From assembly GCF_001194135.2 (NCBI RefSeq), contig NC_068994.1:2905482-2969481 (forward strand): 64,000 nucleotides of DNA, given 5' to 3'. Position numbers and translations under genes: made by a program. Within the stretch, counting starts at the first letter, position 1. Every line of letters begins with the position of its first letter. This document shows, in pieces, positions 3,169 to 59,912 of this stretch. The notes under the pieces were generated by a model that had not been told where the DNA came from, made no database searches, and worked only from the letters and a program-made list of their open reading frames with translations. The DNA is from Octopus bimaculoides (taxonomy: Eukaryota).

Positions 3169-3297
3169 CTGACTCACAACTGCAGTTCATTAACATATAG
3201 CTAAGTGCACAACTACAGTAGCAGTTACACCGGAACACAACATCGAGATACATGTCACTACTTACATACTGTGGAAATGATGGATTAAACAATGAAG
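3169..3297 (+). promoter_or_regulatory. Putative promoter / non-coding leader exon L1 of Pcdh A
   Basis: CTGACTCACA (3169-3178), gcagttac, gagatacatgt and ggattaaacaATGAAG|gtaaat donor (GT 3298). Homologous to blocks ending at 11784, 14848, 24247 and 59912. Confidence 0.65.
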
Positions 3298-5149
3298 GTA
3301 AATTTCACTATTTTGTCTTTTCTTATTTTGTGGCAGTTTTGGTGAATAGCAATTGACTATCTAGATAAAAGAATATAAAAATCTAGCTGTAATTTCCACC
3401 ATTACTGGGAATAGCAGTCAGAGGAAGACATATTTCCATAGCAGTTAGAATAATTACAAGACAGCCATTAATTTTTCTAACAAGGCATATATTTAATTGA
3501 ATCTATGCTTTCTATATTACTTTAATATATTTATACATAATTCTGATGTTAAACTGGGTGGATTTAGTTATTAGGGAATAGTAAACAAGGTTGATCTGTT
3601 GTAATGTAACATTTGTACTAAATAAAAGTGTTAATTATTCTCTGTGTGTATATCTGCATATACATAATAATAAATTGGGGTAAATTTTAAATAAACAGGG
3701 GAAAATTTTAAGGAATCAATAAAATATCTCATTCTTTATCAAAATAAGTAAATACAAAATAAAAATAAAGAATTATTAAATCTACTTTCAGAAATGCACA
3801 TTATGAAAAACAAACTATAGTGTTATATGGTGCAATATTTATTTATAATGATAACTTCATGGCTACAATTTTGGAATAGAATCTCTTTTGATGCAATTAT
3901 TTAAATAACTAATAATACCCTCATTTTTTTAGTTAATTATATCACTTGTTTATAGACCATGCCTGTTGTAAAAATATACAAATAGAAAATGTCTCACTTA
4001 GCAGCATCCACCTATTATATATGATACTGTAATTTATATTGATATGTTTAAGATGAATAAAAGACATGTACATAAGTCTACATTAATTTTGAGAAGATTA
4101 TGACTGCAAGAAAATTTTGTGACTTATCTTCGTTGAGTTCTGACTTTGATGTAGTCATGTACATTCTTGTCATAAGAAAGTAAACTTTACAACTAGAAAC
4201 CTACAGAAAGTAAGCTAAACAGCTATGTATATTATAATACTTTTAAAATGACATAAGAATGATTCAAATATAACATGCACAATTGGAGAAAATTTTTTTA
4301 ATTATTTATATATACTATCCATTTCCTTAAGCAATGTTTTTATAACACTGCACATGCATAAAATGACCAAAATATTTAATTATTTTATTTGATATGTAAA
4401 CATGGCAGTTTCAGAAATTAAAGTCATTCTATAAGATAACCACAAGGCTATAGTGTATCCAGGCTTTTTGAGGTATTTAAGAAATTGAGAGTAGTGGATG
4501 GTAGTTCATTGCAGAGTTAACTTCCAGTTGCCACTGGCTCTCTTTTCTGCTGAGTGAACGGGAGCAATGTGAAATGAAGCGCTTTGCTCAAGGACACGAC
4601 ATGCAACCCAGTTCAAAAATTGTACTTATGACCAAATGAGCATGAAATTAATATGTAAATCACAAGGGTATGTGCTTTCACATACTGATATGTGGAACAA
4701 TGGAGAAAAAGACATCCACTCAACCATTATACAACATATAAATGTATGCAGTTTATATCCTATCAAAGTCATCATAGTGTGTCCATGACAAAGACTCTTG
4801 TACTGTAAAGCAAGAACAACTCATAGCTTTAACCATTGGTTGTTCTGTAAACTAGATCAGTGGTCATAGCTTGCATTGCTGATTTCAACTCCTTCTGAAG
4901 GCACCAGAGAATCCATTCCAGTACTTATTAAAATTAGGGACTCCAATCATATCAACCCATTTTGGACAAAAGATGTGATTATGACTTGCATATAATGGCA
5001 ACTGGGCAACATTCCATTCCATATTTAACTTGTCTTTCAAAAACATCAGCTACTAGATGAATACCTTTCTTAGCCACTACAACTTGGAGTTGTTAAACTT
5101 CTAGAAGAACAGCTCAAGTTCTTCAATGCACTCTAGAAAAATACCAAAA

Positions 5150-5990
5150 GAACTTACTTGTCCCAATACAAAATTATTTTTACTATTGTTATTCCATCAT
5201 TTTTCCCATTACTTTCTCCTACTGCTGCTAATTTTATTCCAAAACCTCCACCTTCTATTCCATCTTCCAAATTTACGAACCTAACAATCTTACTCACCCT
5301 ATTATATCCACTTATAGTTGTTCTAATTCAAATTCTCTCAAAACATCTAAAAAATCTTATATCAGCTTTTGTTTCCTGTCCATCCCCCAACATCACAAAC
5401 ACTAATCACACCATCAGTTTTTCATCTATTCTTCTTTCGAACTTCTCTTCATTCATCATGATTATGACCATCATCATCGTCATTTAACGTCTCCTTTCCA
5501 TGCTGGCATGGGCTTGGATGGTTTAACTGAGGACTGGCAAGCCAGGAGGTTGCACCAGGCTCCAATTTGATTTGGCAAGGTTTCTATAGCTGGATGCCCT
5601 TCATAACACCAGTGACTCCAAGAGTGTATTGGGTACTTTTTACGTGCCACCAGCATGGGAGCCATTCAGGGAGCATTGGCATCGACCATGCTCAAATGGT
5701 GCTTTTTACATGCCACTGGCAGCACTAGCATCGGTATTAAATCCCTATTACTTTCATCCTTACAATGATAACCTGTCAAACTTACAAAACATCTTTGATA
5801 CCTGCTCAGCTCTCATACCCAGCACCATCACTTCCCACTTACATTTTTCATTAATAATCTCAATGCTGCACAAGAATTTAACCTCACTACTTTGGACATT
5901 TTCGTCAGTTTCCGTGATACCTCTGTCACAGTCAATAGCATCTTCATTTCCATTTCTGCATCTTAAACATTCTTAAAATCAATGAGGGAA
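5150..5990 (-). mobile_element. Highly degenerate RTE-like LINE fragment, interrupted by a (CAT)n-tailed RTE 3'-end copy at ~5470-5740
   Basis: Minus strand gives weak RT C-terminal-like residues. The 5470-5740 insert matches 12000-12300, 17200-17350 and 57065-57217. Confidence 0.4.
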
Positions 5991-6570
5991 TCACAACATG
6001 GTTATTCATTCTAGACCTAGCAGCCAAATCTACACTAAAATACTTCCTACAGTCTTAAAGCTTACTGTAGATAATGTAATCCAGAGTACTGTATTCCTAA
6101 ATAAATTAAAAAATAGATAGTCATGGCTTGAATGCCTTCATCACAGATTTGCTTGTTCAAAGCCATCTTAGAGCTAAAGAATAACAACAAATCCAGATAT
6201 TCACTCCTACATCTATTGAATTTTCTTCTCATCTCACTTCACACCCAAATTCCCCCATTTGTCTTATATAGGTTTAGTGATTTAGTAGTAAGTACTCAAA
6301 AGTATGTTTGTATAACAAGACTTTTATGTTATAATTTATACCATATAATTATTTGATTGAAAATATACTCTGTTGCCATTTGTTGGCAAAACAATTCATT
6401 TCATTTCATACATGCAGTGATTAACAAATAAAAAGAATATATTTGAAATGATTTTTCTACACCAACAAGTATCTTCAATCTATAAAACACATAATAATGA
6501 TACTGCTTATTTTATGTAATTTTAAAGTCATTCTTTTCTTATTTTCAGGTATTGTTAATTTTGAAAATAA

Positions 6571-8979
6571 ATGAAAAACAAAGAAATGACAAGGACAAGT
6601 TTGCTGGTATGTATTTTATACCAAGTACTGTCTCTCATTGTCTCAATAGACATCATTTACCATGTCAATGAAGAAGGCGCTCCTCAAACCTATATAGGAG
6701 ACATTGCTATTGACTCAAACTTATCACACCCTCTTACACATCGTCAGGATACTCTCATTACATTTACACAACTACGAAGGAAAGTGGCTAGTGGTTCTCA
6801 ATTATTCAATGTCACCAACTCTGGGAAACTATACACTACACAAACATTGGATACTGAGTCTTTGTGTACATACAACAAAGAATGTTTTAAAATTGTTAAA
6901 GTTGCAGTGAGGAAAGCAGAAACATTTATTACGGTTTTAAGGATAAAAGTCATCATAGAAGACATTAATGATCATCAACCAGAGTTCCCAGAGGATCTAA
7001 TTAAAATAGAATTTGGTGAAACTGATGCAAAAGGATCGACAAAATCAATACCAAATGCTGTGGATAAAGACATTGGTCTTCTTAATTCTAAGATCACATA
7101 TACACTCAAAGACAAAAGTAAGAAATTCTCATTATCTATATCTAATGAATTTGATGGAATGAATATATTGGAAATTATACTTGAAGAAAAATTAGACAGA
7201 GAATTAAAAGACACATACATGTTACAGTTGCTTGCAAAAGATAGTGGCTCCCCACCAAAACAAGGTATTCTGAACATAGAAATCTCTGTTACAGATGTCA
7301 ATGATAACAGACCTATGTTTTCTCAACAAACATACAATATTTCTATCAGTGATACACATCATATCACCTCTCCTGTTTTTGTTTTATCAGCAACAGATTT
7401 AGATTCTGGTCAAAATGGTGACATCACTTATAACTTTCACCAAAAAACAAGGCCTTACATTAAAACAAATTTCAAACTGAAACCAAATGGAGAGATCCTT
7501 CTAAATGAGAATTTTTACAGAAATAAGCAGCAAATATATAAATTATATATTGAAGCAAAAGATAAAGGAAGACCATCTTTAAGTTCTACTGCCACACTAA
7601 TTATCAATGTAATAAGCAATCAAAATAATGCTCCAATTATAGATATAGATTTTGTATCCCCTTTAACAGAGAGTTCTACAGCTATTTCAGAAGCAAGTAA
7701 AATTGGGAGTTTTATAGCTTATGTTATGGTCACTGACACTGATAGTGGACCTAATGGACAAATTAAATGCAATATTCATCATAAAATGTTCCAGCTTTCT
7801 CATATGAGTTCTAAAGAATATAAAATATTGGTCAAAGAACCTCTTGACAGAGAAATTAAAGACCACTATGGCGTTTCTATTGAATGTCATGACTTGGGAT
7901 CACCTCCATTAAAGACTAAGAAACAGTTCTCTGTCAAAGTAACTGATGTCAACGATGTAGAACCACATTTTACCAAAGAGACATTCCAATTCCTCACCTA
8001 TGAAAACCAGAAAGTTGACTTCCCTATTGGCTTCATCAATGCTACAGACCCTGATCTTGGAGATGGAGGTCAACTTACATATTCTATCATCAATGATAAC
8101 AACAATCATAACATTCCTTTCCAACTGACAAAATATGGATTTATTTCTACATCACAATCAATAGATCGAGAAGTGAAGGACATCTATAATTTACAGGTTT
8201 TAGTCAAAGACAATGGAATACCTTCTCTGAATAATACTGCCAATATTCTTATAGAGATTCTAGATAAAAATGATAATGCTCCATATTTTATCTTTCCTAA
8301 AAATGACCCTTACAATCTAGATGTCCACTACCATCCACACAGTAAGAAGGACATCACAATTCTGAAAGCATCTGACAAAGACACTGGAAACAATGCTTTC
8401 CTCACATATGGAATACTGAGATCCAATGATAAAAACCTGTTTACAGTGAACTCACACACTGGTGTGTTATCTTTCTCTCGCACAGTTTACCAAAATGATG
8501 CAGGAACATATGAGCTGCAGTTTATAGTGAAAGACGGTGGTACTCCAGTTCAATCAGCAACAACTGCTATCATACTAACACTGTTTGTTAGTAATGATAC
8601 ATCTCCAATGTTGACTGCTGTCCACTCAAAGTCTGGTAACAACCTTAATATGACTTGGATAATTATCATTGTAGCAGCAGCTGTAATACTGTCTGTGGCT
8701 ATTGTAGTGTCAATAACACTATGTGTTTTCAGATGTATCAATCACATTAATAATTCATCTACAACAACTGATAATCCAAAATTTCTTTCAAGGACTGAAA
8801 TGAGGCAAATATTGTATCAGACTAATAATCCTGTTGCAATAACTAGAAATGCAGAAGACATATTTAACAGAAATCTTCAATCAATAAACCCAAAATGCTC
8901 TTATTACTCAGACATGAAGCAGTCAGCTAATGAATGGAAATTCTCAACTACCCCCAGAAAATTACCACCAGTCCCAATG
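6571..8979 (+). CDS. Protocadherin A, large exon: signal peptide, EC1-EC6, TM, proximal cytoplasmic tail
   Basis: ORF with cadherin motifs (DINDHQPEF, LDRE, DVNDNRP, DVNDVEP, DKNDNAP), EC1 C-x5-C (LCTYNKEC) and TM WIIIIVAAAVILSVAIVVSITLCVF. Acceptor ttttcAG at 6547-6548; phase-0 donor ATG|gtatgt at 8980. The homologous start may be ATG 6586. Confidence 0.95.
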
Positions 8980-10001: not shown

Positions 10002-10161
10002 CATTGTAATGAGGATGAGACAATGAGTTCATCTGAACAAAAATGTTATAACAGCAGTATTATGACATCAAATAACCTGAATGATACATTATCTTCTCAT
10101 AAAGAACGGAAATGTGGTTGGAGTGATGGAGACATTACACATCAAACATCTGGAGCATCAG
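10002..10161 (+). CDS. Protocadherin A exon 2 (cytoplasmic)
   Basis: Poly-T AG acceptor, 160 nt, open in phase 0 (HCNEDETMSSSEQKC...QTSGAS), TCAG|gtaaat donor. Paralogous to 22284-22443. Confidence 0.85.
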
Positions 10162-10500
10162 GTAAATACAAAATAAATCATAAAATTGCAACAAGAATGT
10201 TAATGACATGGGAAAATGAATATCATAAGGAAATTGTTGTTTTTTTATAATGGAGAGTGAAATGTAGTATTCTGACCCATGTAGGGCAGTAACCCTGAAT
10301 AAGAACTAATGTAGATCGTAATGACACATCCAATTTATGCCAGCATTGAAAGAGGTTGAAAATGATAAGAGAACTTCATAGAATTATTATTTTCACAGGA
10401 ACAGAAAAATCATACACAATTAGTAGCTTCTCTAAAATTTTTATACATACATGTATCTTTCTCAACCCTGATCATTAGTAATTTTCATATACTTTTTCAG

Positions 10501-10580
10501 AATATGGCAACTACCGACCAAATATACTCCCGACCCCAAAGACTGTACAAGAGCAAGAAACGTATCTGGAGCCAGTATAA
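10501..10580 (+). CDS. Protocadherin A exon 3 (terminal)
   Basis: tttttcAG acceptor, phase 1. Reads (E)YGNYRPNILPTPKTVQEQETYLEPV*. Confidence 0.85.
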
Positions 10581-10974
10581 TGCAAACACAGTAACATCAG
10601 ATTTACTTTTTAATAACCAAAGAATCAACCCCTCAAATAATTCAATAGTGTATTAATAACATTCCATATAGCACTGTTTTCAATTAATCTTTTATTGAAA
10701 ACTCTTTAACAAATACTGAAGTTATAATTTTCCAATGAAGGTCATAGGGCTGATGCTAATTTTGGTGAGGTTTTCACTACTTTTTATTAAGTAAAGTATT
10801 TTTAGTATTAGCATTATATTATACATTGATAATACTAATAGATTTCAGTAGAGCTATATTGTGATGAATGAAAATAACTGCAGCAACTCTTTTCTTGAAA
10901 CTGGAATACAAGTATCCTGAGACAAGGTACATAACTCTTCTAGAGCTTCAAATACTGAAGCAGTATGCCGTCTT

Positions 10975-11110: not shown

Positions 11111-11694
11111 TATTTTCCTTTGATGACATTTTACCTGTCAAGAGCAAAACATGACTTTCTGCATATATATATATATATATATTCTTCCATTTGACAGCAT
11201 GAATTTCCACATTTTCAAACAGACTTCAAACTAAGAAGATAATGCCTAAATATGGCACTAAAATAAAATGACAAAAAATCATAGAATCAAGCTCAATGAT
11301 TTTAAAACTATGGACATAATAATTTTTTACATGAGAATTATAGAAGGCAATCTTTATATAAACATAGATGAGTAGATATGCCTCTAGCAAAGATATTGGT
11401 AAAGTAAAGGAAAATGAATCTACACTATTCTTCTTCTTAACATTAAAATTATCTTTCAAATATAGCATTTTATCTAAATATCATTGCATTTATTTATTAT
11501 TGTATAGGTTTTGTTGGAAGAAATGTTAATGTATCAAATGTATCTAGCCTTATTACAAATGAGATATGAAAAGCAATCCCAAATACACATAACCACACAT
11601 ACATTCACATATTAAATATATTTTAAAAACATTTTAAATACATTTATGAATTCACATTTCATTGGAACTCATTTTTGAAATATGACTGCAATTT

Positions 11695-11784
11695 GTGAAC
11701 AACAGCAGCAGTTACAGAAGAAGACTCCTACGAGATACATGTTTTTCTTCTTTTACGACAACAACAAAAGATTAAACAATGAAG
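11695..11784 (+). promoter_or_regulatory. Orphan leader exon L2
   Basis: gcagttac, cgagatacatgt and gattaaacaATGAAG|gtaaat match L1. The CTGACTCACA motif is not recognisable. Confidence 0.6.
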
Positions 11785-13838: not shown

Positions 13839-14219
13839 CATTAAGATAAGAATGTGGCAATGAGTCCTGCTGATCAAAAATGTTACGGTAGTATTGAAAC
13901 ATCAAACAACCTTAGTGAGACATTACCCTGGAACAAAGAATGGAACTATGTCTAGAATAAAGGAGACATTAAAAATCAAGCAATGGGAGCATCAGGTAAT
14001 AATGAAATAAACAAAAAAATTCAAACAACAAATAAAAATTTCCCTTAAGAAACATAACCTAGATATATTCAAATATTTGTCATGGAAACAAATTAAAACA
14101 TCATTAAGTAGTTTCCCCTTATTCTTATATAATTTCCAGAATATAGCAAGTACCAGCCAAACATACCTCTGACACCAAAGAATGAACAAGAACAAGAAAT
14201 CTATTCAGAGTTTATGTAG
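13839..14219 (+). pseudogene. Orphan Pcdh exon 2 (13839-13995) and exon 3 (14140-14219) with no ectodomain exon upstream
   Basis: Splice sites and phases are intact. Exon 2 has in-frame TAA (13842) and TAG (13953, where paralogs have TGG). Exon 3 reads (E)YSKYQPNIPLTPKNEQEQEIYSEFM*. Confidence 0.8.
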
Positions 14220-14701
14220 TGTAGTAATTATATCTTGCTTGTTTGGTTCTCATTAACAATAGAAAGAATTTCGATATAAATTATTTGTTTCAAGCAATAA
14301 TGAGTACTGCTTAAGATAATATTCAATGGTTATAAAATTTAAACTTGATCATTTAAGGAAAAAATTCTTTTAAGATTCAATTAAGCATATTTTATTTATT
14401 TATTTATTTTTACTTTAAAACTTTTGATATTTCAATTAAAATCAAATATTGCCTAATTTTTTTAAAATACAGTAGATAAATAATATAAACTCAAAACATA
14501 AAATTGAAGATAAAATTTCTGTAAAATGGAAATGCATTATGTGAGTCTACGCAAATTATACAGTTAAAGTCAGTTGATGTTATCTTCATTTTTACATTAA
14601 AGTTTATCAATTATATATAATAATATATTGTGCATATACACGCACACACATAAACACATCATTAGTTAAGCATTTATGGTCCTGATTCTACCTCCCACTC
14701 C

Positions 14702-14848
14702 CTGATTCACACCAGCACACAGCTATTGTCAAACTACTACATCAACAAGCAGCTATTTTAATACTACTACTATAGCAGCAAAAGCAGGCTACACCAGTAT
14801 GTATCTCTCTCTCAGAATCTAAAATGGGAAAAGGATTAACCAATGAAG
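14702..14848 (+). promoter_or_regulatory. Putative promoter / leader exon L3 of Pcdh B
   Basis: CTGATTCACA (14702-14711) and ggattaaccaATGAAG|gtatgt donor (GT 14849). Confidence 0.65.
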
Positions 14849-16831: not shown

Positions 16832-16902
<71 letters not shown>

Positions 16903-17351: not shown

Positions 17352-18261
17352 TAACTGAATTGAATTTTGTGTTTGTTATTTGAAGATAGAATGGTGAATA
17401 CTTGCTTAAGTTTAAGCAAAAGAAAATGTACTTATACACAAAGTACTTAGATGAAGAGAGTATAAATGTGAGAACTCAGTAAGATGGTGCCTGTATCTCA
17501 CTGATGCTTTAGTAAAGAATCACAATAGGATGTAGCCTTAATGAGAATACACCCTCTTCCATCTACTTCATACACAACATTTTATATAAACTCCTAAAAT
17601 TTGAATTCTAATGTAAGCATACTTTGTGTCTTGCCTATGGATTTTGTCTTGACTTCAAGTTAATTAGAACATAAATTCTCATCCTTATGTTGAGGTTGAT
17701 GATATTCATCAAATTCACTCAGATCATTTTAAAAGGAATCTATCTGTAGTTTAAATTACTATGAATTTCAAGAGATATAATTTATTTATTATGTGCTTTA
17801 GGTGTCCTTCACTTGACTAAGAGATAACTTTTGATGCAAAAATTCTGATAAAATAATAATGTAAGCAGTAAGTAAGTTAACACAACATTAACTATACTTT
17901 ATTTCTGAACTACGTAAGCTATGTTAATATTTTGGTCATTCAATAGTGTCATACCCACAACTCGGTGCTAATTTTGCATTAATTCATCTCAATTTCATTA
18001 TTTCAAATTTAAAAAAAAATTCATTAAATTTTAGTTTCATTCACCACTTCATGACATAAATTTCCAAAATAGTTCCCAATATTATTTTTGCAAAAAGAGG
18101 GGCAACACGTATTTCCCAAATATTAATTTGATGCTACAAATATTGTGGATAAATATCATAAATGTGAAGTGATCATTCATGTTGACTGTTTTAATCTAAT
18201 AATAGAATTTCCATTTGTTTTTCAAGATACTGAGAGTCTGCAGGATTTGTGAAGAATCATA

Positions 18262-20658
18262 ATGACAAAAGAGAGTGGCTTATTCATCTGTCTACTACAT
18301 ACTTTACTACACTGTGTTCTAAGTGTAGATATCACTTACCATGTCAACGAAGAAGATAGTCCTCACACTTACATAGGAAACATTGCTGCTGATTCTAACT
18401 TTTCTCAATCTCTCAAACATCATCAAGGAACTCCCATTACATTTACACAGTTGCAAAGAACAATGTCAATGGGATCTCACTTATTCAATGTCACTAATTC
18501 TGGGAAACTATACACTACACACACACTTGATGCTGAGTCTCTATGCATTTACAAAAAAGAATGTTTTAAAATTGTCAAAGTAGCTGTTAGGAAAGAAGAA
18601 GCATTCATAAAAATATTAAAGATAAAGATAATAATTGATGATATTAACGATAACCAACCAGAGTTTCCAGAAGATCAAATTAAATTAGAATTTGATGAAA
18701 CTGAAGCAAAAGGTTCAACAAAATCAATACCAAATGCTGTGGATAAAGACATTGGTATTTTCAATTCTAACATCACATATGAACTGAAAGATAAAAGTAA
18801 TACATTTATATTATCAATATTCAAAGAGTTTGATGGAATGAAAATACTTAAAATAGCACTAGAAGGTAAGTTAGACAGAGAATTAAAAGACACTTATATG
18901 TTACAGTTAGTTGCAAAGGATAGTGGTTCTCCTCCCAAAGAAGATACTCTGAACATAGAGATATCTGTTATTGATGTCAATGATAATAGACCTATGTTTT
19001 CTCAGCAGATGTACAACATCACAATTAGTGATACACATCATACATCTTCTCCTGTTTTTGTTTTATCAGCTACAGACTTAGATTCAGGTCAAAATGGTAA
19101 TATCACATATAACTTTTATCAAAAAACAAGCTCTTATCTCAAAACACATTTCAAACTGAAACCAGATGGAGAGATATTCCTAAATGAGGATTTTTACAGA
19201 AATAATCAACAAAAATATAAATTATATATTCAAGCCAAGGATAGAGGAAAACCATCTTTAAGTTCTTCAGCCACACTAATTATCAATGTAATAAGCAATC
19301 AAAATAATCTTCCAAATATAAACATAGATTTTGTATCACCTTTAACAGTGAATTCTGCTGCTATTTCAGAAGCAAGTAAAATTGGGAGTTTTATAGCTTA
19401 TGTTATGGTCACTGACACTGATAGTGGACCTAATGGACAAATTAAATGCAATATTCACCATAAAATGTTCCAGCTTTCTAATATGGGGTCTAAAGAGTAT
19501 AAAATATTAGTCAAAGAACCTCTTGACAGAGAAACTATAGATCATTATGTTGTTTCTATTGAATGTCATGATATGGGATCACCTCCATTGAAGACTAAGA
19601 AACAGTTTTCTGTCAAAGTAACTGATGTCAATGATGTAGAACCACATTTTACCAAAGAGACATTCCAATTCCTCACCTATGAAAACCAGAAAGTTGACTT
19701 CCCTATTGGCTTCATCAATGCTACAGACCCTGATCTTGGAGATGGAGGCCAACTTACATATTCTATCATCAATGAGAACAAAAATGATAACATTCCTTTC
19801 CAACTGACAAAATATGGATTTATTTCTACATCACAATCAATAGATCGAGAAGTAAAAGACATCTATAATTTACAGGTTTTAGTCAAAGATAATGGGACAC
19901 CATCACTGAATAACACTGCCAATATTCTTATAGAGATTCTAGATAAAAATGATAATGCTCCATATTTTATATTTCCTAATAATGATCCTTACAATCTAGA
20001 TGTCCACTACCATCCACACAGTAAGAAGGACATCTCAATTCTGAAAGCATCTGACAAAGATTCTGGAAACAATGCTTTCCTCACATATGGAATACTGAGA
20101 TCCAATGATAAAAACCTGTTTACAGTGAACTCACACACTGGTGTGTTATCTTTCTCTCGCACAGTTTACCAAAATGATGCAGGAACATATGAGCTGCAGT
20201 TTATAGTGAAAGACGGTGGTACTCCAGTTCAATCAGCAACAACTGCTATCATATTAACACTGTTTGTTAGTAATGATACATCTCCAATGTTAACTGCTGT
20301 CCACTCAAAGTCTGGTAACAACCTGAATATGACTTGGATAATTATTATTGTAGCAGCAGCTGTAATACTATCTGTGGCCATTGTAGTGTCAATAACACTA
20401 TGTGTTTTCAGATGTATTAATCATATTAATAATTCACAAACAACAAAAAATAATCCAAAATTTCTTTCAAGGACTGAAATGAGGCAAATATTGTATCAGA
20501 CTAACAATCCTGTAGCAATAACTAGAAATGCAGAAGACATATTTAACAGAAATCTTCAGTCAATAAACCCCAAAACTTCCTATTACCCAGAGATGGAACA
20601 GCCAGCCAATGAATGGAAATTCTCAACAACACCTAGGCGATTGCCACCAGTTCCACAG
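18262..20658 (+). CDS. Protocadherin B, large exon (SP, EC1-EC6, TM, proximal tail)
   Basis: 810-aa ORF colinear with gene A. Phase-0 donor CAG|gtaaga at 20659; candidate acceptors at 18226 or 18243. Confidence 0.95.
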
Positions 20659-22283: not shown

Positions 22284-22443
22284 CATTACAATAAGGATGT
22301 GGAAGAGAGTTCAACTGAACAAAAATGTTTTAATGCCAGCATTGTGACATCAAACAATCTAAATGATACACTACCCTCTCTTAAAGAACGGAACCGTGGG
22401 TGGAGTGAAAGTGACATTACATCTCAGAAATCTGGAGCATCAG
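22284..22443 (+). CDS. Protocadherin B exon 2
   Basis: gacAG acceptor, 160 nt, open (HYNKDVEESSTEQKC...QKSGAS), TCAG|gtaatt donor. Confidence 0.85.
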
Positions 22444-22757
22444 GTAATTATATAGTAATTCAGAACATTCTAATTGAAATTATATAGTAATTCAGAACAT
22501 TCTAATTTATGAAAGTAACAAATTTAATAAATAAATTCTGTAAATGAACTCCATAAATGAATTCAATAAATGAAATGAAATTTTATTATTTAGTAAAACA
22601 AAAAATAATTCAAAATAGCTTTTAGCATTTTAAAATAGTTAATGTTAGATTTTATTTCTAAGAAACAAAGAATCATATAGATTTAGTAAACAGTTTTACA
22701 AATGTACATGTCTCATGGAAAACAATACAGTAAACTACGTTTTTATATATTTTTCAG

Positions 22758-22837
22758 AATACAGTAACTATCGACCAAACATACCTCCTACACCAAAACA
22801 TGATCAAGAACAAGAAACTTATCTAGAGCCTGTATAG
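22758..22837 (+). CDS. Protocadherin B exon 3 (terminal)
   Basis: ttttcAG acceptor. Reads (E)YSNYRPNIPPTPKHDQEQETYLEPV*. Confidence 0.87.
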
Positions 22838-23477: not shown

Positions 23478-24127
23478 CTGAGAGAATTATTGGAAAGATA
23501 GGTGAAGTGAAGTGAAGTGAAGTGAACTAGTTAAGTTTAGGAGCTGATGCTAGTTCAAGGACTGTTTTTAAGATTTTGTCTTCTACTTTAAGAAACTTAG
23601 GTATTTTTTTTAAATTACATTTTGTAATTTGAAAATTGTAATTGTAAAAATGAAAAGTAAAATACTTTATTAAATAATGGTTAGAGTAAAAAAATTGAAG
23701 TTAAAATCTACTGAAGAAAAATAGCACCATTTTATTTACTTCGTAAAATTTTTATAAGCTACTTTCATAAATTTAGCCATACATACAAATTGACAGTACT
23801 CAAGATACTGTTTCAGCTTCACACCAATTATTATGTACCAATCTACCTGGAGAAAAAAAATGGCTGAACTTAGGTTCTTGGGGAGAGAATGCAGCTCCTT
23901 AATTCATATGATAGAAATGATTATATCATTTAGAACAATAAAATTCTCCAAGATCTTAAGATTTAAAGAATAAACAAAAGTAGATGATTTCCTTCATAAC
24001 CTTGCAGGTGGCTGATCAAAATCAAGTCTAAATTAAAAAGAGAAAAAGAACATACATACAACCACACACATACATATCTATGTACATGTGTATGTATTCA
24101 TTGCTTTTTGCTACTCTATCCTACTGC

Positions 24128-24247
24128 CTGATTCACAATTCCAGTTCATCAATATATTGCTATTGCAAAATCACTGCTACACAGGAATACTATACCAGGA
24201 TACATGTCTAGTTACATACTGTAACAACAATGGATTGGGCAATGCAG
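24128..24247 (+). promoter_or_regulatory. Putative promoter / leader exon L4 (positional leader of Pcdh C)
   Basis: CTGATTCACA (24128-24137), ggatacatgt...ttacatactg and ggattgggcaATGCAG|gtaagt. Aligns along its length with L1. Confidence 0.65.
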
Positions 24248-42586: not shown

Positions 42587-42651
42587 TTATGAAAGAGATC
42601 TAATAAATATACCAATTAAAATACCATACTAAATGTTTCTTTTAACTTCAG

Positions 42652-42814
42652 CCTATTGATCAGCCAAGTAAGGAATCTTCTGATGAGCATGGAGAAAATA
42701 TATCTACTAAGAGTATCAATTATATGAGTAATACATTGCCATGCCAATGGCCTTCTGAAAGTACCTGGGATGAAAGATATACAAGAAATTTCAGTGATAT
42801 TTCTATTACATCAG
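42652..42814 (+). CDS. Protocadherin C exon 2
   Basis: cttcAG acceptor, 163 nt, open in phase 0 (PIDQPSKESSDEH...SNTLPCQW...ISITS), TCAG|gtaatt donor as in paralogs. Confidence 0.75.
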
Positions 42815-43417
42815 GTAATTTGTGAATTATATTCTATTTTTAAAGAGTTCTGTATGATCTTTAGCATTTCTCTTAGTTGTAATTAATTTCAAATGATTAA
42901 TGTGAAAATTGTAAAGTTCAAAATGAGTACTTTGACATAATGATAGAGTTTGATACTACAAAAGTAGTATACAACTACATTAGATTCATAAGAATAAATT
43001 TTGTTTGGTACAAAGGTGATCTAACATATTATTTCATATTTGTTTATTCACAAACTCTCATTGCACTTTAACATCTTCTGCTGCCTGATAGGTGTTAGTA
43101 TGTAAGAGAATAAGTTTACAAACCAGACTGCTAGCACTCAGTACCAAAACATATGCGTATGTAATATATTACATATATTTTTATTTAATCTAAGGATTGA
43201 CAGTATCCATTGATTCTGCCAGCTCTCATACACTGATGAAACGGATGAGGCTAATACTCAGCTTGAACTTCTGTAGATTACTGTCAGAATACAGCAGTTC
43301 TGGGAAGAAAGAATTGCGTGAAATGATTTGTAGAAAATTTTCTTAAAAATAATTGGCTAAAATATGTAATCCAATGATTTGAGCATAAGTTTTTTTATTT
43401 TATTTTATATTTTACAG

Positions 43418-43509
43418 AGTTTGATGAATCTAAACCAGATGTTCCTCCAAAACCAAATCTTCTACAAAACCAAGATACATATTTAGAGCCAATGTATCTA
43501 ACAAAATAA
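43418..43509 (+). CDS. Protocadherin C exon 3 (terminal)
   Basis: tttacAG acceptor, phase 1. Reads (E)FDESKPDVPPKPNLLQNQDTYLEPMYLTK*. Confidence 0.8.
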
Positions 43510-44619: not shown

Positions 44620-44753
44620 ATGGAATACACAGCAGCTGGAGCAGTCTGTTAGATAGTTACGCCTGCTATTGTGCCAATAGTTACAGTGGACTACCTGTTA
44701 AGAGGCTCTAATTACAAAGAACATTAGCAACACTAATAAATTAATCAAACAAG
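44620..44753 (+). promoter_or_regulatory. Tentative leader exon L6 (positional leader of pseudogene D)
   Basis: Lies ~1.1 kb after the preceding terminal exon, like other leaders. cagcagc/agttac motifs and a strong AAG|gtaagt donor at 44754, but weak similarity otherwise. Confidence 0.35.
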
Positions 44754-47076
44754 GTAAGTTTTTTCAACAGTACTATTCAGAATTATCTTTCATAACAAAC
44801 CAGTAAGCCGATGATAATGGTTTGGTTTTAGAAATCAATTTGCTTAAACTGGAATACTGAAAGTACTTTTAGAAATAAAACATAATACTTAGAAAACTGT
44901 TCAGATAAGAAACCCTAGATTTGTTACATAACTTTGATGCGGCGAGGTTTGGAAAGAAATACATTTTTTGAAACTACTCAAAAACTTCATAGACTATATT
45001 AAATAACTAGCAAGGTGTTAGTATAGCATCTCCAAGGCATTAGTATTAGTCATTGTTTTACGATGATAAATAAAACTTTGAAGAAAATTGAAACCTGACG
45101 AGCCAATTGCGTACGTTTAAATGCAAGTGATGTTTTCGCAATCGAATATGTCAAATTATAAAGAAAATAAAGCAAATTTTATTAAATATAAACACGATTC
45201 TTTTGAAAATGCTCACAATTTACTTTCACTTTCCACCGCTTTCTATACATAAGTTTATTTTATTTTTAAGTTACAAACTTTCTAAATGTAATTACAAATA
45301 AAAAATGAAAATTCAGGTAAATAAACTTCTGTACAATATTGCCCAAATCCTGAGAGGGTGCTTTTGAATCATCTTCGGGTCGCGTCAAAATTACACGATA
45401 TATCTGACGTGCTGGGACAATGGACAGCATCGCAAAATTTTCGGCGATTAGAAAACTTTATCTCAGAATTTTACCATTTTCAGATTAAAGCTAAACATTA
45501 CCTATTTTGAACCTGAGTAGTTCTATTTAACGGCTATACAATCTTTATTTGTTTATATCTTATGTATTTTGCTTTCTCATTTAAAAAGCACTAGTGTATT
45601 CATTCTCATACTTTTTGAAGGATTGAGTACTATGGCATGAGTCTGTGAAATTGTCCAGTATAATTAAACAACCAGACTTATCCACACTCAATATTTTTTA
45701 AAATATATGCTGTCGACTTTTTTGAGAAACAGACAGTGAATCGGCTACTTTGACTCTTAATTGGAAAACTGTTGTCATTGATGTGCCACAATTAGTATGA
45801 CAAGTTTATTTACCATGCTGAAAGAAGCAAGCTATGGTCACGATGTAATGATCTCTAAGTCGCATCAATCATCAAATAGAGGAATTTGATTATTGGTCAA
45901 ATTGAATTCCATAAGAGAGAGACAAGTGATGACGTTCCTATTCGATGTGTGTTTGTGTGTGTGTGCGCTTGTTTCGATATCGATCCGTTTATGTCATTTT
46001 TCCCGAATCTCTATATATACTGAATAATTCGCTATTTTCCCGTTATTAGGAGCAAACTTATTTTTCCTAATTATGTCTGCGGCAAAAACAAAATTGGAAA
46101 AAGAATATTAGAAAACAGAAACAAATTGAGTTTCAAGTGATTAGCGTTTCTCATTAAAAGATGTTGGCTATATTTTGTTTTGACTTGAAAAGCTGTCATC
46201 TAGGTTCGTTAATTTCAGTAATTTTTTTTTATTTACTTACTTCTGTTTTAAAGTGAAAGAGAGGAGAAAGTGAAAAATGTATATACGCGGATATGAAATG
46301 GATGTGTGTATGTGAGGGAGAGGGGGGGGGAGAAAGAAAAGGGGTGTGTCATGTATATGTACATACATCAATACATATGCACACATCGTTTTGTATGTAT
46401 ATGTGCGTTGTGAGCAATTCACTCGAATATACCCCCTATTCATTTGAGACCTCGTGCCATGCATTTAAAGAAAATAAATAAATAAATGACTATTGTAGAA
46501 CAACGCTAGTTTCATAATATTCTGTTGTTACTCACAAAAAAAAAACCAGATCGATGACGTTCATTATTTAACTCCCAGAAGCTTTGGTGCCCGACCCAAT
46601 TTTAACTCTCAAATGAAGCATTTTAACACATTGCTCCCTTTTTAATTTTCATAGAGAAACTAGATTTACAATAATCCTTCAAAATCGACCGCCACTTTTC
46701 TGCGGGATGTGTAGCACACAGCTGCTACAACCCTTTTTCTTGTTTCTTCGTTCTCCATCGCTTTCTACTCTTCCTCCTTGTGCCTTTCTTCTCCACATCA
46801 AATCTACAAAGTGGAGCGTCCTCGTAAAAGTCCTTTGAATGCACTTAAGTTGAATCCACGACTTATATCAAATTTGAATTATCGCTGAAAATGCTTGATT
46901 TTTACCTGTAAACGATATAAAAAAAAATTTTAAACCGTCAAGTCTTGTTTTTGTTAATGACTCTACCAATGACATATTAATTGATAAATTCAGCTGAACT
47001 GTTAAACCGAAGTTCCAACTAGTATTTACAATACTATATTTCTATTGGTATGCTATTTTATTTTCGGCATACAATA

Positions 47077-56419: not shown

Positions 56420-57872
56420 TTACTTTTTTAGCTTGTGGTACAATAATTAATAATGATATTGGACACAATGGAGATGTTACATTCTCTTATTAAAAGACAC
56501 CTTGACAAAGAAACATCTGTTGTATATCATGACATGGAATCATCTCCATTGAAGACTAAGAAACAGTTTTCTGTCAAAGTAACTGATGTCAACGATGTAG
56601 AACCACATTTTACCAAAGAGACATTCCAATTCCTCACCTATGAAAACCAGAAAGTTGACTTCCCTATTGGCTTCATCAATGCTACAGACCCTGATCTTGG
56701 AGATGGAGGCCAACTTACATATTCCATCATCAATGATAACAACAATGATAACATTCCTTTCCAACTGACAAAATATGGATTTATTTCTACATCACAATCA
56801 ATAGATCGAGAAATGAAAGACATCTATAAGTTCAAGGTCTTAGTGAAAGATAATGGAACACCTTCTCTCAATGACACTGCCAATATTGTTATTGAGATTC
56901 TAGATAAAAACGATAATGCTCCCTATTTCATCTTTCCTAATAATGACCCTTACAATCTAGATGTCCACTACCATCCACACAGTAAGAAGGACATCACAAT
57001 TCTGAAAGCATCTGACAAAGACACTGGAAACAATGCTTTCCTCACATATGGAATACTGAAATCCATCATCATCATCATTTCATGTCTGTTTTCCATGCTG
57101 GCATGGGTTGCACAGTTTGACAGGAGCTGTCCAGACTCCATTTGTCTGTTTTGGCAAGATTTCTACAGCTGGATGTCCTACTTAGTACCAGCCACTTTAC
57201 AGAGTGTGCTGGGTGTTGCACTTACACGCTGATGTGCTATCTTTCGCGGACAATTTACCAAAATGTTTCAGAAACATATGAGCTGACCTTAACAAGTGAT
57301 GTAATAGCATTACTAGCACAATAGAACATGGTATTGACTTATAACACCATTTACTCTACTTTGTAATATATTATGGTTGCATAACAAAATACCATGTTCT
57401 TAAAGTCATTAATATTAGCTGGAGTTTATAGTGGTACTCCAGTTCAATCAGCAACAGCTGCTATCATACTAACATTGTTTGTTAGTAATGATACATCTCC
57501 AATGTTGACTGCTGTCCCATTCCAGTCTGGTAACAACCTGAATATGACTTGGATAATTATCATTGTAGCAGCAGCTGTAATACTATCTGTGGCTATTGTA
57601 GTGTCCATAACACTGTGTATTTTTAGATGTATTAATCACAAAATAACTCACCTACAACAACAGATAATCCAAACTTTCTCTCTCAGACTGAGATGAGACA
57701 ATTACTGTATCAGACTAACAATCCTGTTGCAATAACGAGAAATGCAGAAGAGATATTTAACCGAAATCTTCAGACAATAAAATCTAAAAGTCAGTTTTTT
57801 CTGGAGATGGAACAGACACCAGATGAGTGGAAATTCTCCACAACACAAAGGAGACTTCCACCTGTGCCTCAG
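56420..57872 (+). pseudogene. Protocadherin D pseudogene: decayed EC4, near-pristine EC5 to mid-EC6, insertions, TM, frameshifted tail; EC1-EC3 not found
   Basis: 56420-56530 is degenerate EC4 (FLACGTIINNDIGHNG). 56540-57064 is almost identical to paralogs. RTE-tail insertion at 57065-57217, degenerate EC6 at 57218-57285, unrelated insert to ~57428, 1-nt frameshift near 57641. Ends RRLPPVPQ with a CAG|gtaaat donor. Confidence 0.85.
57065..57217 (-). mobile_element. (CAT)n-tailed RTE 3'-end copy inserted into the Pcdh D coding exon
   Basis: catcatcatcatttcatgtctgttttccatgctggcatgggtt matches the 5470 and 12000 copies and interrupts EC6 after YGILKS. Confidence 0.8.
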
Positions 57873-58215
57873 GTAAATATTATTTTATGTCACTGATATC
57901 CTTTTGATTTTAAATGCAAAAGTATTTTATTGATTATTCACATATGTTCAAACATTTCTATAAAATATCAACTTCAGAAACTCATGTGTATGAGCTGTTT
58001 TATTCCTTTGCTTAAAATTTATAGTCTATCTGCGACTTTCTGAATTAACTATTCTTTTTTGTTTAGTGATAGTTAAACAGTTACAATGCTCATTATAGAA
58101 ATATAATACTCTTTATATAAAGACTGTTTTATTAGGTGTGATCTAGACTTGTATTGATATAATTTTTTATCTTTTCTATAATCAACTGAAATATGATTTT
58201 ATCCATAGTTGAGAA

Positions 58216-58336: not shown

Positions 58337-58500
58337 GTAACTTTTATTGAAACATAACATATAAATGTAATTACCTTTATTACTGTAGGACAATATATAA
58401 TGTTATGCTTAGTGTAATATAAGATCAATGTTTCTATCTTTATATCTTGGAATTGTTATATTGAAATGTAATTTGTGTTTGTATATTTGATATTTTGCAG

Positions 58501-58580
58501 AATATACCAATGACAATCCAGTTGCAGCCACAATACTAAAGGGACAACAAATACAAGATACCTATCTACAGCCAACATAG
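58501..58580 (+). pseudogene. Exon 3 of Pcdh D
   Basis: ttttgcAG acceptor, 80 nt. Reads (E)YTNDNPVAATILKGQQIQDTYLQPT*. Confidence 0.75.
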
Positions 58581-59689
58581 TAGATGTTCCATGACTATTG
58601 TTAAATGATTCTCTCACACACCAAATCTTATACAATACTTTATATTCATATAAAAATATCAACTCTTTGTTTCTTTCACACATCACACATAAATGGCCTT
58701 ACATTGGTTTTTGTTATGACCCCTGATTTACATCTCTGATACCTCAAATACTAGAAATGCCCTTATCTATATTATCATTGATGACAGTATATTGGGCTCA
58801 TTGAATGTTATATTTAATTTTCTAAGCTCCAGTTTTAGTGTGATTCTAATTTCTATATTTACATCTACCATTTGTAGCATAAAACAACATAAAAGTTTTG
58901 CTATTATATCATTTAACTAATGATATTAATCTGGAGGTTCTGCAGAATGTTGTCATATTTTGTAGTATCCACAGCATCTGAGAGAAGAGTAATAATAAAT
59001 TTAGCATAATATGAAGTAAAGTGAAATATTACATGAAAAATGTTTACATCTAGTGTTGAATTTCGATTGAGTAAATCTTATGAATACTCCCCAAATTAAA
59101 TACATTCCAACACTAAAGATTTCTAATTTGTCCATTCACTTAAAATGTGGCTATACGAATATTTCATAGAAATAATAAAATACAGTTTTTATGCAGCAAA
59201 AGCCATTATGAATAATTTACATTTACTGTTGTTGCCTAATAGCTGTTGTTTAGATTTCTTTTTGCCACGTTTGTATCAACAATGTCTATTTCTTTAACTA
59301 ACATTGAATTTTTTATTGTTACAAGAATCTTTTTATTGCTAGGATATACTACAATCAGTTTAATATTAAAAAATACTTAATAACAGAACTAAATAGGATA
59401 CTCCTCGATTAATCACACTATCTATAAAATATATGAAAGATAATTACACATAATTCATCAAACAGCTTCTGTTTAACATGAATTCTCTTGTTTGATGTGT
59501 TTTGTGTGACACAGACAACATTGCAGTAATTTCCTATTGGATGAGAGAGATTTTCTAGATTTCTTTCAATATTGAAAGTGAGGCTGATAGCTTTTTTCTT
59601 TGTTCATCATACACACAATTGTGTGTGTGTGTGTGGAGGACATAGAGTTGTAACTAGCACACACCAGCATCTGGCTAACATCTCACCTC

Positions 59690-59912
59690 CCACTACATAC
59701 AGCAACTGTCACACTATTATATCAGCAGTTACACAGGAACACTACCACCACCACTACAACAACAGCAGCAGCAGTAACATAGGAACACTACTATAACAGC
59801 AGCAGTACCACTATAATACCACTTCAGCAGCAGCAGCAGTTAGAGTGGAACACTACAGCAGGATACACATCATCCATCACACACAACTACAGTGAAGGAT
59901 TAAACAATGCAG
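59690..59912 (+). promoter_or_regulatory. Leader exon L7 of the next array unit (its large exon is not in the window)
   Basis: cacctcccact, agcagttacac, ggatacacat and ggattaaacaATGCAG|gtaagt donor (GT 59913). Confidence 0.6.

What the first reader, a model, noticed from the sequence alone, without database searches (positions are those of the whole stretch)
3169..59912. Each array unit has its own conserved promoter/leader cassette: a possible promoter-choice system without constant exons
Five blocks end in the same donor context, ggatt(aaa/aac/ggg)caATG(A/C)AG|GT, at 3297, 11784, 14848, 24247 and 59912. Four sites carry CTGA(C/T)TCACA ~110-150 nt upstream of a donor (3169, 14702, 24128, 34540), with shared gcagttac and gatacatgt words. 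These short islands persist while flanking intron and spacer DNA has no visible similarity, and each lies ~0.5-2 kb after the previous gene's last exon. In vertebrate clustered Pcdhs, a conserved CTCF-bound element in each promoter drives stochastic choice (established). Here each gene has private tail exons, so a shared AP-1-like TGA(C/T)TCA or initiator-type motif could be an independent route to paralog choice (inference).
Basis: partly seen in the sequence, partly recalled or inferred. Interest (0 to 1): 0.75.

Follow-up and report, generated by a model that had tools for sequence, protein, structure and literature searches.

The report
Conserved non-coding leader exon of octopus protocadherins
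Each protocadherin gene in this octopus tandem array starts with a short non-coding exon whose last ~150 bases have been kept since before octopus and argonaut split; it is a real shared leader, but nothing here shows it is a promoter or a gene-choice switch.

Summary
Six blocks, all on the + strand, have donors at 3297, 11784, 14848, 24247, 34653 and 59912. Each is recovered by a profile built without it (E 6e-8 to 6e-26), and nothing else in the 64 kb scores below E 0.1.

- **Splicing:** RNA contigs from three runs join 3297|GT to AG|6549, 22 nt before the ATG of an ~880-aa protocadherin. The block is therefore the 3' end of a non-coding exon 1.
- **Conservation:** the block sits once per gene in O. 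vulgaris, O. sinensis and Argonauta hians clusters. It carries 2.0% substitutions against 5.6% in flanks between close Octopus species (p = 4e-4).
- **Relic:** one copy (11784) belongs to a dead unit. A second (24247) has no coding exon of its own.

The promoter reading is not supported. In gene 1 the RNA starts at least 217 nt upstream of CTGACTCACA, so the motif is transcribed. Only 2 of 6 blocks carry a canonical AP-1 heptamer, and there is no CTCF or CGCT element. No data bear on paralog choice.

A conserved ATG 6 nt before the donor opens a junction-spanning upstream ORF, which suggests translational control. Private tail exons were already published.

The parts
2952..3297 (+). Gene 1 exon 1, the non-coding leader, as far as RNA contigs support it. 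The family-wide conserved block is about 3145-3297, and CTGACTCACA is at 3169-3178.
   Evidence: RNA contigs join 3297|GT to AG|6549 in X16, X19 and X25. Contig 5' ends are at 2785, 2952 and 3001. Leave-one-out nhmmer hits 3151-3306 at E 5.7e-26.
6549..8979 (+). Gene 1 exon 2: 22 nt of 5' UTR plus the large cadherin exon (ATG at 6571, with the homologous ATG of paralogs at 6586).
   Evidence: The joint and the donor at 8979 come from RNA contigs. Pfam Cadherin scores 1.8e-72.
10002..10580 (+). Gene 1 private tail exons 3 (10002-10161) and 4 (10501-10580, stop TAA at 10578). The 3' UTR continues beyond this.
   Evidence: The loose end of the RNA contig maps at 10002. The spliced model gives 882 aa, ending as O. 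vulgaris P0001 does.
11630..11784 (+). Orphan leader block of a dead unit, with a degraded motif ATGAATTCACA.
   Evidence: nhmmer E 3.6e-15. Its orthologue differs at 10 of 151 sites (6.6%), against 2.0% pooled for the gene-linked blocks; its own flanks read 10.7%, but that alignment includes poorly aligned stretches, so the within-locus contrast (p 0.15) is not informative. No cadherin ORF follows it.
13839..14210 (+). Pseudogenised tail-exon copies of the dead unit, with in-frame stops.
   Evidence: tblastn with the tail peptide shows stop codons.
14682..14848 (+). Leader block of gene 2, with CTGATTCACA at 14702-14711.
   Evidence: nhmmer E 1.4e-8. The O. vulgaris orthologue differs at 5 of 151 sites.
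18227..20658 (+). Gene 2 exon 2 (predicted acceptor at 18227, ATG at 18262).
   Evidence: ORF and Pfam results. The acceptor is read from the sequence, with no RNA check.
22284..22837 (+). Gene 2 tail exons (22284-22443 and 22758-22837).
   Evidence: Placed by homology to the gene 1 tail and a spliced model of 878 aa.
24110..24247 (+). Leader block with intact motifs (CTGATTCACA at 24128-24137) and no coding exon of its own. It is either an orphan or an alternative first exon of gene 3.
   Evidence: nhmmer E 8.8e-22. No cadherin or tail remnant lies between 24247 and 34500. It sits 1.3 kb after the stop of gene 2.
34523..34653 (+). Leader block of gene 3, with CTGACTCACA at 34540-34549 and donor GCAA|GTAAGT. 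It lacks the ATG at -6.
   Evidence: nhmmer E 5.9e-8. The O. sinensis orthologue differs at 1 of 151 sites against 6% in flanks, p 0.003.
36380..38822 (+). Gene 3 exon 2 (ATG at 36423).
   Evidence: It is 97.5% identical to O. sinensis P0036.
42649..43509 (+). Gene 3 tail exons (about 42652-42814 and 43418-43509).
   Evidence: tblastn with the P0036 C-terminus and a spliced model.
44620..44754 (+). Weak seventh leader-like block (ATAGTTACAGTGGACTAC ... AATCAAACAAG|GTAAGT).
   Evidence: It recurs as a sub-threshold nhmmer hit at E 0.2-0.7. The sequence was read. It lies 1.1 kb after the gene 3 stop. Low confidence.
56486..57887 (+). 5'-truncated protocadherin pseudogene (aa ~420-808). Its tail-exon region is at 58172-58778.
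   Evidence: tblastn. The O. sinensis orthologue in L004 is intact.
59502..59912 (+). Class-2 leader of the next gene, whose coding exon lies beyond the window. It comprises an upstream module (59502-59665, with CCTATTGG and CTGATAG), repeated CAGCAGTTACAC-GGAACAC units, and the donor at 59912.
   Evidence: nhmmer E 2.5e-21. It aligns with Argonauta L003 from about -410 to +75.
10733..10742 (+). CAATGAAGGT in the gene 1 3' UTR. This is not a leader.
   Evidence: No block surrounds it in the alignment or in nhmmer.

Best explanation
The window holds a head-to-tail array of complete protocadherin genes from an Octopus species. Each gene has four exons: a non-coding leader, one 2.4-kb exon for the ectodomain and transmembrane region, and two small private cytoplasmic exons.

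The blocks in the finding are the last ~150 nt of the leader exon plus its 5' splice site. They descend from one ancestral leader and have stayed under purifying selection in units that still carry a gene. They decay in units that have lost the coding exon.

- **Shown:** for gene 1 the block is transcribed and spliced onto the coding exon.
- **Inferred:** the transcription start lies roughly 300-350 nt upstream of the donor. That is outside the family-wide block, so the CTGAYTCACA box is leader sequence rather than an upstream promoter site.
- **Mechanism I commit to:** the block is a shared 5'-leader control module. Its conserved ATG, 6 nt before the donor and in an A-rich context, opens an upstream ORF that crosses the splice junction. 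That ORF ends on the main ATG (TAATG or ATGA) or runs past it out of frame, which would throttle translation of the protocadherin.
- **Other words:** CTGAYTCACA-CAGTTCATCAATATA, CAGCAGTTACA-GGAACAC and GGATTAAAC would be linear protein-binding sites on the RNA or on promoter-proximal DNA. Which of the two is not resolved.

Each gene has its own promoter simply because whole genes were duplicated.
For: - **Splice joint:** 3297|GT..AG|6549 is seen in RNA contigs of three runs from three studies, with no intron coverage. The donor at 8979 joins to 10002.
- **RNA start:** spliced contigs are colinear with the genome upstream to 2952 (X19, the deepest run, with zero depth at 2700-2951), 3001 and 2785. 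Six RNA runs hold 0.64 of the words of 3100-3400, which is everything up to the donor.
- **Copy number:** six copies, all on the + strand, with leave-one-out E 6e-8 to 6e-26 and no other hit below E 0.1.
- **Other species:** the block occurs once per gene in O. vulgaris, O. sinensis and Argonauta hians loci, at E 1e-12 to 1e-31, about 1-1.5 kb after the previous coding end and 2-6 kb before the next ATG. A subfamily only ~50% identical in protein still has it.
- **Motif specificity:** TGAYTCACA occurs 11 times in 245 kb of octopod cluster DNA. Nine of these lie 112-145 nt upstream of a leader donor.
- **Constraint:** the three gene-linked blocks differ from their orthologues at 9 of 453 sites, against 184 of 3259 in flanks (Fisher p 4e-4). 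The orphan 11784 differs at 10 of 151.
- **Upstream ATG:** it is present at -6 in most near-subfamily leaders, including Argonauta. The upstream ORF ends on the main ATG in gene 2, Ah3_b, Ah3_c and Os4. It overlaps out of frame for 42 codons in gene 1, its O. vulgaris orthologue and Ah2_b.
- **Composition:** the block is C-rich and T-poor on the sense strand (A+C 60% against 49-50% in flanks), an asymmetry expected of a transcribed-strand feature.
Against: - The start site was never mapped. Contig ends are only a proxy, contig depth is flat, and X16 has RNA continuous from upstream that could come from the previous gene's 3' UTR. A second, major start inside the block is not excluded.
- RNA evidence exists for gene 1 only.
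- In class-1 units, paralogue conservation starts sharply about 25 nt upstream of CTGAYTCACA. That is also what a core promoter plus a short exon 1 would look like.
- In class-2 units, conservation with Argonauta runs about 75 nt into the intron and about 400 nt upstream. This points to DNA-level elements as well.
- The upstream ORF has no constant form. The gene 3 leader (34653) lacks the -6 ATG, and every leader has other upstream ATGs.
- CAATG could be conserved as a DNA site, for example a SOX-like AACAATG or a CCAAT box (recalled from memory, not tested).
- No conserved RNA structure was found.
Confidence: 0.55

Rival explanations
1. The block is a compact promoter plus a short first exon. 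CTGAYTCACA is a bZIP/AP-1-like or initiator element just upstream of the start, followed by a TATA-like CAATATA and an initiator-like CAGTTAC. The shared element lets a common factor choose among paralogues.
For: - Paralogue conservation begins abruptly about 25 nt upstream of the motif and nothing further upstream is shared.
- The spacing from motif to donor is held at 112-146 nt across genera, 127 in Octopus against 126 in Argonauta.
- CATCAATATA follows the motif by about 22 nt in 4 of 6 class-1 leaders, and CAGCAGTTACA is the best-conserved word.
- Conservation crosses the exon-intron border in class-2 units.
- There is no RNA structure.
Against: - In gene 1, spliced RNA contigs and the word content of six RNA runs include 70-380 nt upstream of the motif.
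- The canonical TGASTCA is present in only 2 of 6 blocks and is not enriched in the window.
- Class-2 and distant-subfamily leaders lack the motif yet keep the rest of the block.
- No data on choice exist.
Confidence: 0.25
2. The similarity is only leftover from tandem duplication or occasional gene conversion, and the block has no function of its own beyond carrying a splice donor.
For: - Whole-gene duplication is the published origin of the family (PMC9068888).
- Gene conversion clearly acts on the coding exon. Four-fold-site divergence between genes 1 and 2 is 0.16 while their introns do not align.
- Global identity of blocks (0.61-0.73) is only modestly above AT-rich controls (0.52-0.68).
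Against: - Introns and spacers of the same units have lost all similarity while the block has not.
- It is retained in Argonauta and in a subfamily only ~50% identical in protein.
- Substitution rate between close species is about one third of the flank rate in gene-linked copies. The orphan copy runs at 6.6%, above the gene-linked 2.0%, though a single 151-nt block cannot establish neutrality.
Confidence: 0.1
3. The block is a fragment of a dispersed repeat or transposon that happens to lie in the cluster.
For: The cluster is rich in SINE-like repeats. A genome-wide scan could not be run.
Against: - All copies in 245 kb from four species are on the gene strand, one per unit, at a fixed place between the previous tail exon and the next coding exon.
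- It is spliced as exon 1.
- It shows no similarity to the window's repeats and matches no Rfam family.
Confidence: 0.03

Closest known systems
Conserved sequence element (CSE, CGCT box, a CTCF site) upstream of each variable exon in vertebrate clustered protocadherins (review PMC7811963)
   Same: A short non-coding element is repeated once per paralogue, in one orientation, at a roughly fixed place ahead of the large ectodomain exon of a tandem protocadherin array. It is conserved while surrounding DNA is not.
   Different: - There is no sequence relation. The blocks lack a CGCT box, and the window has no excess of CTCF-like sites and none at a leader.
- The octopus element lies in a separate, spliced, non-coding exon 2-6 kb from the ATG and is transcribed. 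The CSE is promoter DNA about 200 bp from the ATG.
- There are no shared constant exons (PMC9068888).
- Choice is demonstrated in vertebrates and untested here.
Conserved 5' leader exons with upstream ORFs in animal mRNAs (uORF-mediated translational control; general knowledge)
   Same: A conserved upstream ATG in a favourable context. The upstream ORF terminates on the main start codon or overlaps it. The leader is strand-biased and unstructured.
   Different: Here the upstream ORF is split by the first intron. Its start is conserved but its length and peptide are not, and no translation data exist.
Whole-gene tandem duplication of cephalopod protocadherins (PMC9068888; PMC6339937)
   Same: Head-to-tail multi-exon genes, private 3' exons, pseudogene fragments and signs of gene conversion are all seen in this window.
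   Different: The papers I could search and read do not describe a shared leader exon or any shared cis element.

Membership tests
Vertebrate-type clustered-Pcdh promoter choice (CSE/CTCF) | A CGCT-box CSE or CTCF motif at each alternative promoter | tested here: not met
   CCASYAGRKGGCR with up to 2 mismatches gives 8 hits against 6.1 expected, and none lies at a leader. The aligned blocks contain no CGCT.
Vertebrate-type clustered-Pcdh promoter choice (CSE/CTCF) | Variable first exons spliced to shared constant exons | tested here: not met
   Each gene has its own two tail exons. The gene 1 RNA contig joins 8979 to 10002. PMC9068888 states the same.
Vertebrate-type clustered-Pcdh promoter choice (CSE/CTCF) | Stochastic, mutually exclusive expression of paralogues in single neurons | not testable with these tools
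   This needs single-cell or allele-resolved RNA data.
Non-coding leader (5' UTR) exon shared by tandem paralogues | Transcribed and spliced to the coding exon | tested here: met
   The joint 3297|GT..AG|6549 is seen in three RNA runs. This covers gene 1 only; the other genes could not be tested.
Non-coding leader (5' UTR) exon shared by tandem paralogues | One copy per gene unit, on the gene strand, upstream of the coding exon | tested here: met
   Exceptions are relic or orphan copies at 11784 and 24247, and no leader within 10 kb of the L005 gene.
Non-coding leader (5' UTR) exon shared by tandem paralogues | Purifying selection relative to flanks | tested here: met
   9 of 453 against 184 of 3259 substitutions, p 4e-4. 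The block is conserved in Argonauta.
uORF-mediated translational control | A conserved upstream ATG giving an ORF that ends at or overlaps the main start in the mature mRNA | tested here: inconclusive
   The -6 ATG is present in most leaders, and the stop falls on the main ATG in 4 modelled mRNAs and beyond it in 3. The gene 3 leader lacks it, and acceptors other than that of gene 1 are predicted only.
uORF-mediated translational control | Ribosome initiation at the upstream ATG and an effect on main-ORF output | not testable with these tools
   This needs ribosome profiling or reporter assays.
AP-1/TRE promoter element | The canonical TGA(C/G)TCA heptamer | tested here: inconclusive
   It is present in 2 of 6 window blocks (3170, 34541). 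Two have TGATTCA and two have neither. The heptamer is not enriched in the window, 11 found against 10.4 expected.
AP-1/TRE promoter element | Located upstream of the transcription start | tested here: not met
   For gene 1 the RNA contigs begin 170-380 nt upstream of the motif. A minor internal start is not excluded.
Dispersed repeat / transposon fragment | Copies in unrelated contexts and on both strands | tested here: not met
   Within 245 kb from four species all copies are in the leader position on the gene strand. The whole genome could not be scanned.

The most novel reading that the evidence does not exclude
The block is the octopod counterpart of the vertebrate protocadherin CSE. On this reading it is an independently evolved, family-wide cis element, working on DNA or on nascent RNA at the 5' end of every paralogue. 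A common factor would use it to activate one or a few paralogues per neuron, giving convergent promoter choice in an array that has no constant exons and no CTCF sites.
Probability: 0.08. Interest if true: 0.85.

Novelty: new member of a known kind. Interest (0 to 1): 0.42.

Why it matters
Regulation of the large cephalopod protocadherin arrays has been called still enigmatic (PMC10658181). I found no paper in the searchable library that describes a shared cis element.

This work gives a concrete, alignable ~150-nt module present at every gene, conserved from Octopus to Argonauta, with defined words and a conserved upstream ATG. That makes it an obvious first target for CAGE, ATAC-seq, ribosome profiling and reporter mutagenesis. 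Its profile could also be used to annotate first exons, and to spot dead units, across octopod protocadherin clusters.

The result also narrows the hypothesis space. The element is not CTCF-like, and in the one gene tested it is transcribed rather than upstream of the start.

Tried and rejected
- **RNA structure:** RNAalifold on 11 leaders gave zero pairs. Single-sequence z-scores ranged from -2.4 to +2.4 with no trend.
- **Known RNA families:** no Rfam hit in the window.
- **CTCF-like motif:** no enrichment.
- **AP-1 heptamer:** no enrichment.
- **Shared upstream promoter module in class-1 units:** local alignments of -650..-160 were no better than shuffles, apart from one borderline pair that does not survive fifteen comparisons. 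The class-2 upstream module is not found at other leaders.
- **TATA boxes:** TATA-like words occur at no consistent distance. A TATAAAAG at 2889-2896, kept in O. vulgaris, fits a start near 2920, but such words are common in 70% A+T DNA.
- **More RNA evidence:** Junctions for 11784, 14848, 24247, 34653 and 59912 are therefore untested.
- **Transcript contigs through partial proteins:** only one came back (L007, unknown species, 323-nt 5' UTR), with no significant match to the block at E 0.1.
- **Look-ups:** P0053 was not on record, and Albertin 2015 is not held.
- **Self-correction:** my first gene 1 protein (885 aa, reading through exon 3) was wrong at the C-terminus. It was corrected to 882 aa with a fourth exon.


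Full report
**What the window is.** The 64-kb window is AT-rich (27-39% G+C). It carries three intact ORFs of about 810 aa on the + strand (6571, 18262, 36423) and one truncated copy (56486-57887). All have strong Pfam Cadherin matches. The best database relatives are "protocadherin beta-15-like" proteins of O. vulgaris (93%), O. sinensis (97.5% for gene 3) and Argonauta hians (about 73%). Orthologous loci from O. vulgaris (L001) and O. sinensis (L008, L004) align with the window through introns and spacers. Where the alignment is unbroken, substitutions run at about 5-6%. The source is therefore an Octopus species close to those two.

**Gene structure.** RNA contigs and homology give four exons per gene.
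- Gene 1: leader ending at 3297; 6549-8979; 10002-10161; 10501-10580. The product is 882 aa.
- Genes 2 and 3 are built the same way, each with its own two small tail exons.
- Private tail exons and whole-gene duplication are already published for cephalopods (PMC9068888).

**The observation.** A profile of the five listed blocks finds a sixth at 34523-34653, whose donor is GCAA|GTAAGT. In leave-one-out tests every block is recovered at E 6e-8 to 6e-26, and no other place in the window scores below E 0.1.
- The CAATGAAGGT at 10733 is a chance match in the gene 1 3' UTR.
- A recurrent sub-threshold hit at 44620-44754 ends in AAG|GTAAGT, 1.1 kb after the last exon of gene 3. It may be a seventh, decayed copy.
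- Self-BLAST confirms that units share only the coding exon, the tail exons, SINE-like repeats and the leader blocks.
- Upstream regions at -650..-160 of class-1 units show no similarity above shuffles, apart from one borderline pair that does not survive fifteen comparisons.

**The blocks are exons.** RNA contigs of three runs from three studies join 3297|GT to AG|6549. That is 22 nt upstream of the ATG, and the intron has no coverage apart from repeats. The "donor context" is thus a real 5' splice site of a non-coding exon 1.

**Where transcription starts.** The same spliced contigs stay colinear with the genome well upstream of the conserved block.
- X19 reaches 2952. It is the deepest run and has zero depth at 2700-2951.
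- X25 reaches 3001, with a separate upstream contig ending at 2896.
- X16 reaches 2785.
- Six RNA runs hold 16 of 25 sampled words of 3100-3400, which is everything up to the donor.

CTGACTCACA at 3169 is therefore inside RNA that begins at least 170-217 nt further upstream. Contig ends are a poor proxy for start sites, and contig depth is flat. A second start inside the block cannot be excluded, but the simple promoter reading is not what the data show.

An independent hint comes from the class-2 unit at 59912. Conservation with Argonauta extends to about -410 and includes a near-invariant CCYATTGG...AAAGTGAGGCTGATAGC module at -386 to -320. If that module is the proximal promoter, a start near -300 would follow. 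This last step is inference.

**Depth and breadth of conservation.**
- The block is found once per gene, on the gene strand, in Argonauta hians (L002, L003; E 1e-8 to 1e-20) and O. sinensis (L004, L008).
- It lies 1-1.5 kb after the previous coding end and about 2-6 kb before the next ATG.
- A subfamily only about 50% identical in protein (L005, L006) keeps a recognisable version: CCCTATCC...CCTGAC...CATCAACA...GCCATTGTCACAC...ACAGCAGC-TTTACAATGG...CCAATG...AAAAG|GTAAG. Its profile cross-detects window blocks at E 1e-4 to 4e-3.
- Across 245 kb of cluster DNA from four species, TGAYTCACA occurs 11 times. Nine of these are 112-145 nt upstream of a leader donor, with 127 nt in Octopus gene 1 and 126 nt in Argonauta.

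**Selection.** Between close Octopus species, the three blocks attached to intact genes differ at 9 of 453 sites, against 184 of 3259 in their flanks (Fisher p 4e-4). The block at 11784 differs at 10 of 151 (6.6%). That is above the 2.0% of the gene-linked blocks, although one 151-nt block cannot establish neutrality, and its own flank figure (10.7%) includes poorly aligned stretches. It heads a unit that has lost the cadherin exon, and its tail exons carry stop codons. That contrast argues that the block is maintained for the gene it serves.

Gene conversion does not explain this. The coding exons of genes 1 and 2 are homogenised (four-fold-site divergence 0.16), yet their leaders are among the least similar pairs.

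**Anatomy of the block.**
- Class-1 leaders (3297, 14848, 24247, 34653 and two in Argonauta L002) read: pyrimidine-rich tract; CTGAYTCACA; CAGTTCATCAATATA; (CAG)n-CAGTTACA; GGAACACTAC; GAGATACATGT; GGATTAAACAATGNNN|GTAAGT.
- Class-2 leaders (59912, O. sinensis L004, Argonauta L003) lack CTGAYTCACA and have CTGTCACAC instead. They carry repeated CAGCAGTTACAC-GGAACAC units.
- The sense strand is C-rich and T-poor (A+C 60% against about 50% in flanks).
- There is no conserved RNA structure and no Rfam match.
- An ATG sits 6 nt before the donor in most near-subfamily leaders, including Argonauta.

**The upstream ORF.** In modelled spliced mRNAs the ATG at -6 opens an upstream ORF that crosses the junction.
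- It ends on the main ATG in window gene 2 (TAATG) and in Argonauta Ah3_b, Ah3_c and O. sinensis Os4 (ATGA).
- It runs 42 codons past the main ATG, out of frame, in gene 1, its O. vulgaris orthologue and Argonauta Ah2_b.
- The distant subfamily has a 3-codon mini-ORF near the exon end.
- The gene 3 leader at 34653 lacks the ATG.
- Only the gene 1 acceptor is confirmed by RNA.

**Interpretation.** The best-supported reading is an ancient, selectively maintained, non-coding leader exon shared by all octopod cluster protocadherins. Each gene has one because whole genes were duplicated.
- I commit to a 5'-leader control function, most likely translational throttling through the conserved upstream ATG. 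The other words would act as linear binding sites on RNA or on promoter-proximal DNA.
- The rival, a compact promoter with a start inside the block, is kept at about 0.25. The sharp 5' edge of conservation, and the conservation across the exon-intron border in class 2, fit it.
- The AP-1 idea is weak. Only 2 of 6 blocks have TGASTCA, and the heptamer is at chance frequency in the window.
- The vertebrate mechanism is not copied here. There is no CGCT or CTCF element and no constant exons.
- Nothing here tests stochastic choice.

**Novelty.** Searches of the held literature found the cluster organisation but no description of a shared leader or cis element. One review calls the regulation of these clusters enigmatic. 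Albertin 2015 could not be read.

Noticed in passing
window 7915-8514 (gene 1); ~19594-20190 (gene 2); ~37800-38400 (gene 3); 56516-57065 (pseudogene); L003 ~11296-11846: A ~600-nt island inside the large coding exon is 91-99% identical between paralogues that are otherwise 58-78% identical. It is 88-94% identical to Argonauta, so synonymous sites are frozen too. Candidates are gene conversion plus a nucleotide-level constraint, such as an exonic regulatory element or an RNA-editing structure.
   Followed up: partly
window 6571-8979 vs 18262-20658, and their introns: Four-fold-site divergence between genes 1 and 2 is only 0.16, and amino-acid divergence is similar at 0.14. Their introns and spacers do not align at all. 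The coding exon appears to have been homogenised by conversion with sharp borders at the exon edges.
   Followed up: partly
window 11630-14210: A dead mini-unit consists of a leader exon (donor 11784) followed by pseudogenised tail exons (13839-14210, with in-frame stops). The 2.4-kb cadherin exon is deleted. O. vulgaris has the same arrangement.
   Followed up: yes
window 56486-57887 vs L004 1-2130: The window copy lacks the first ~420 codons, whereas the O. sinensis orthologue is a full gene. A 45-nt tandem array of 14 copies (53737-54368) lies just upstream. This could be a lineage-specific truncation or an assembly problem.
   Followed up: partly
window 21-230 = 1418-1627; N runs at 528-537, 1628-1637, 62210-62219; 62161-62209 = 62220-62268: Exact duplications abut 10-N gaps, which looks like scaffolding artefacts. 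Distances across 1-2000 and around 62.2 kb should not be trusted.
   Followed up: no
window 5453-5725, 11975-12395, 57063-57214, 63823-64000, 17192-17367 (-): A SINE-like repeat family with 66-nt internal repeats is very abundant in RNA contigs, with word depth up to ~2500 and many variant reads. It accounts for the only RNA signal inside intron 1.
   Followed up: no
L001 21606-21613 (O. vulgaris orthologue of the 14848 donor): In O. vulgaris the leader ends CAATGTAG|GT, so the upstream ATG is followed at once by a stop (a start-stop mini-ORF). The window species has a 13-codon upstream ORF instead.
   Followed up: no
L007 (Logan contig SRR8281666_21009) 1-323: A protocadherin transcript contig from an unidentified species has a 323-nt 5' UTR that is richer in G+C, and a frameshift between two ORFs. 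It has no significant match to the octopod leader block.
   Followed up: no
window 41500-41856: A 119-codon open frame with no Pfam match lies in the intron between gene 3 exon 2 and its tail exons. The region is conserved in O. sinensis at about 89%.
   Followed up: no
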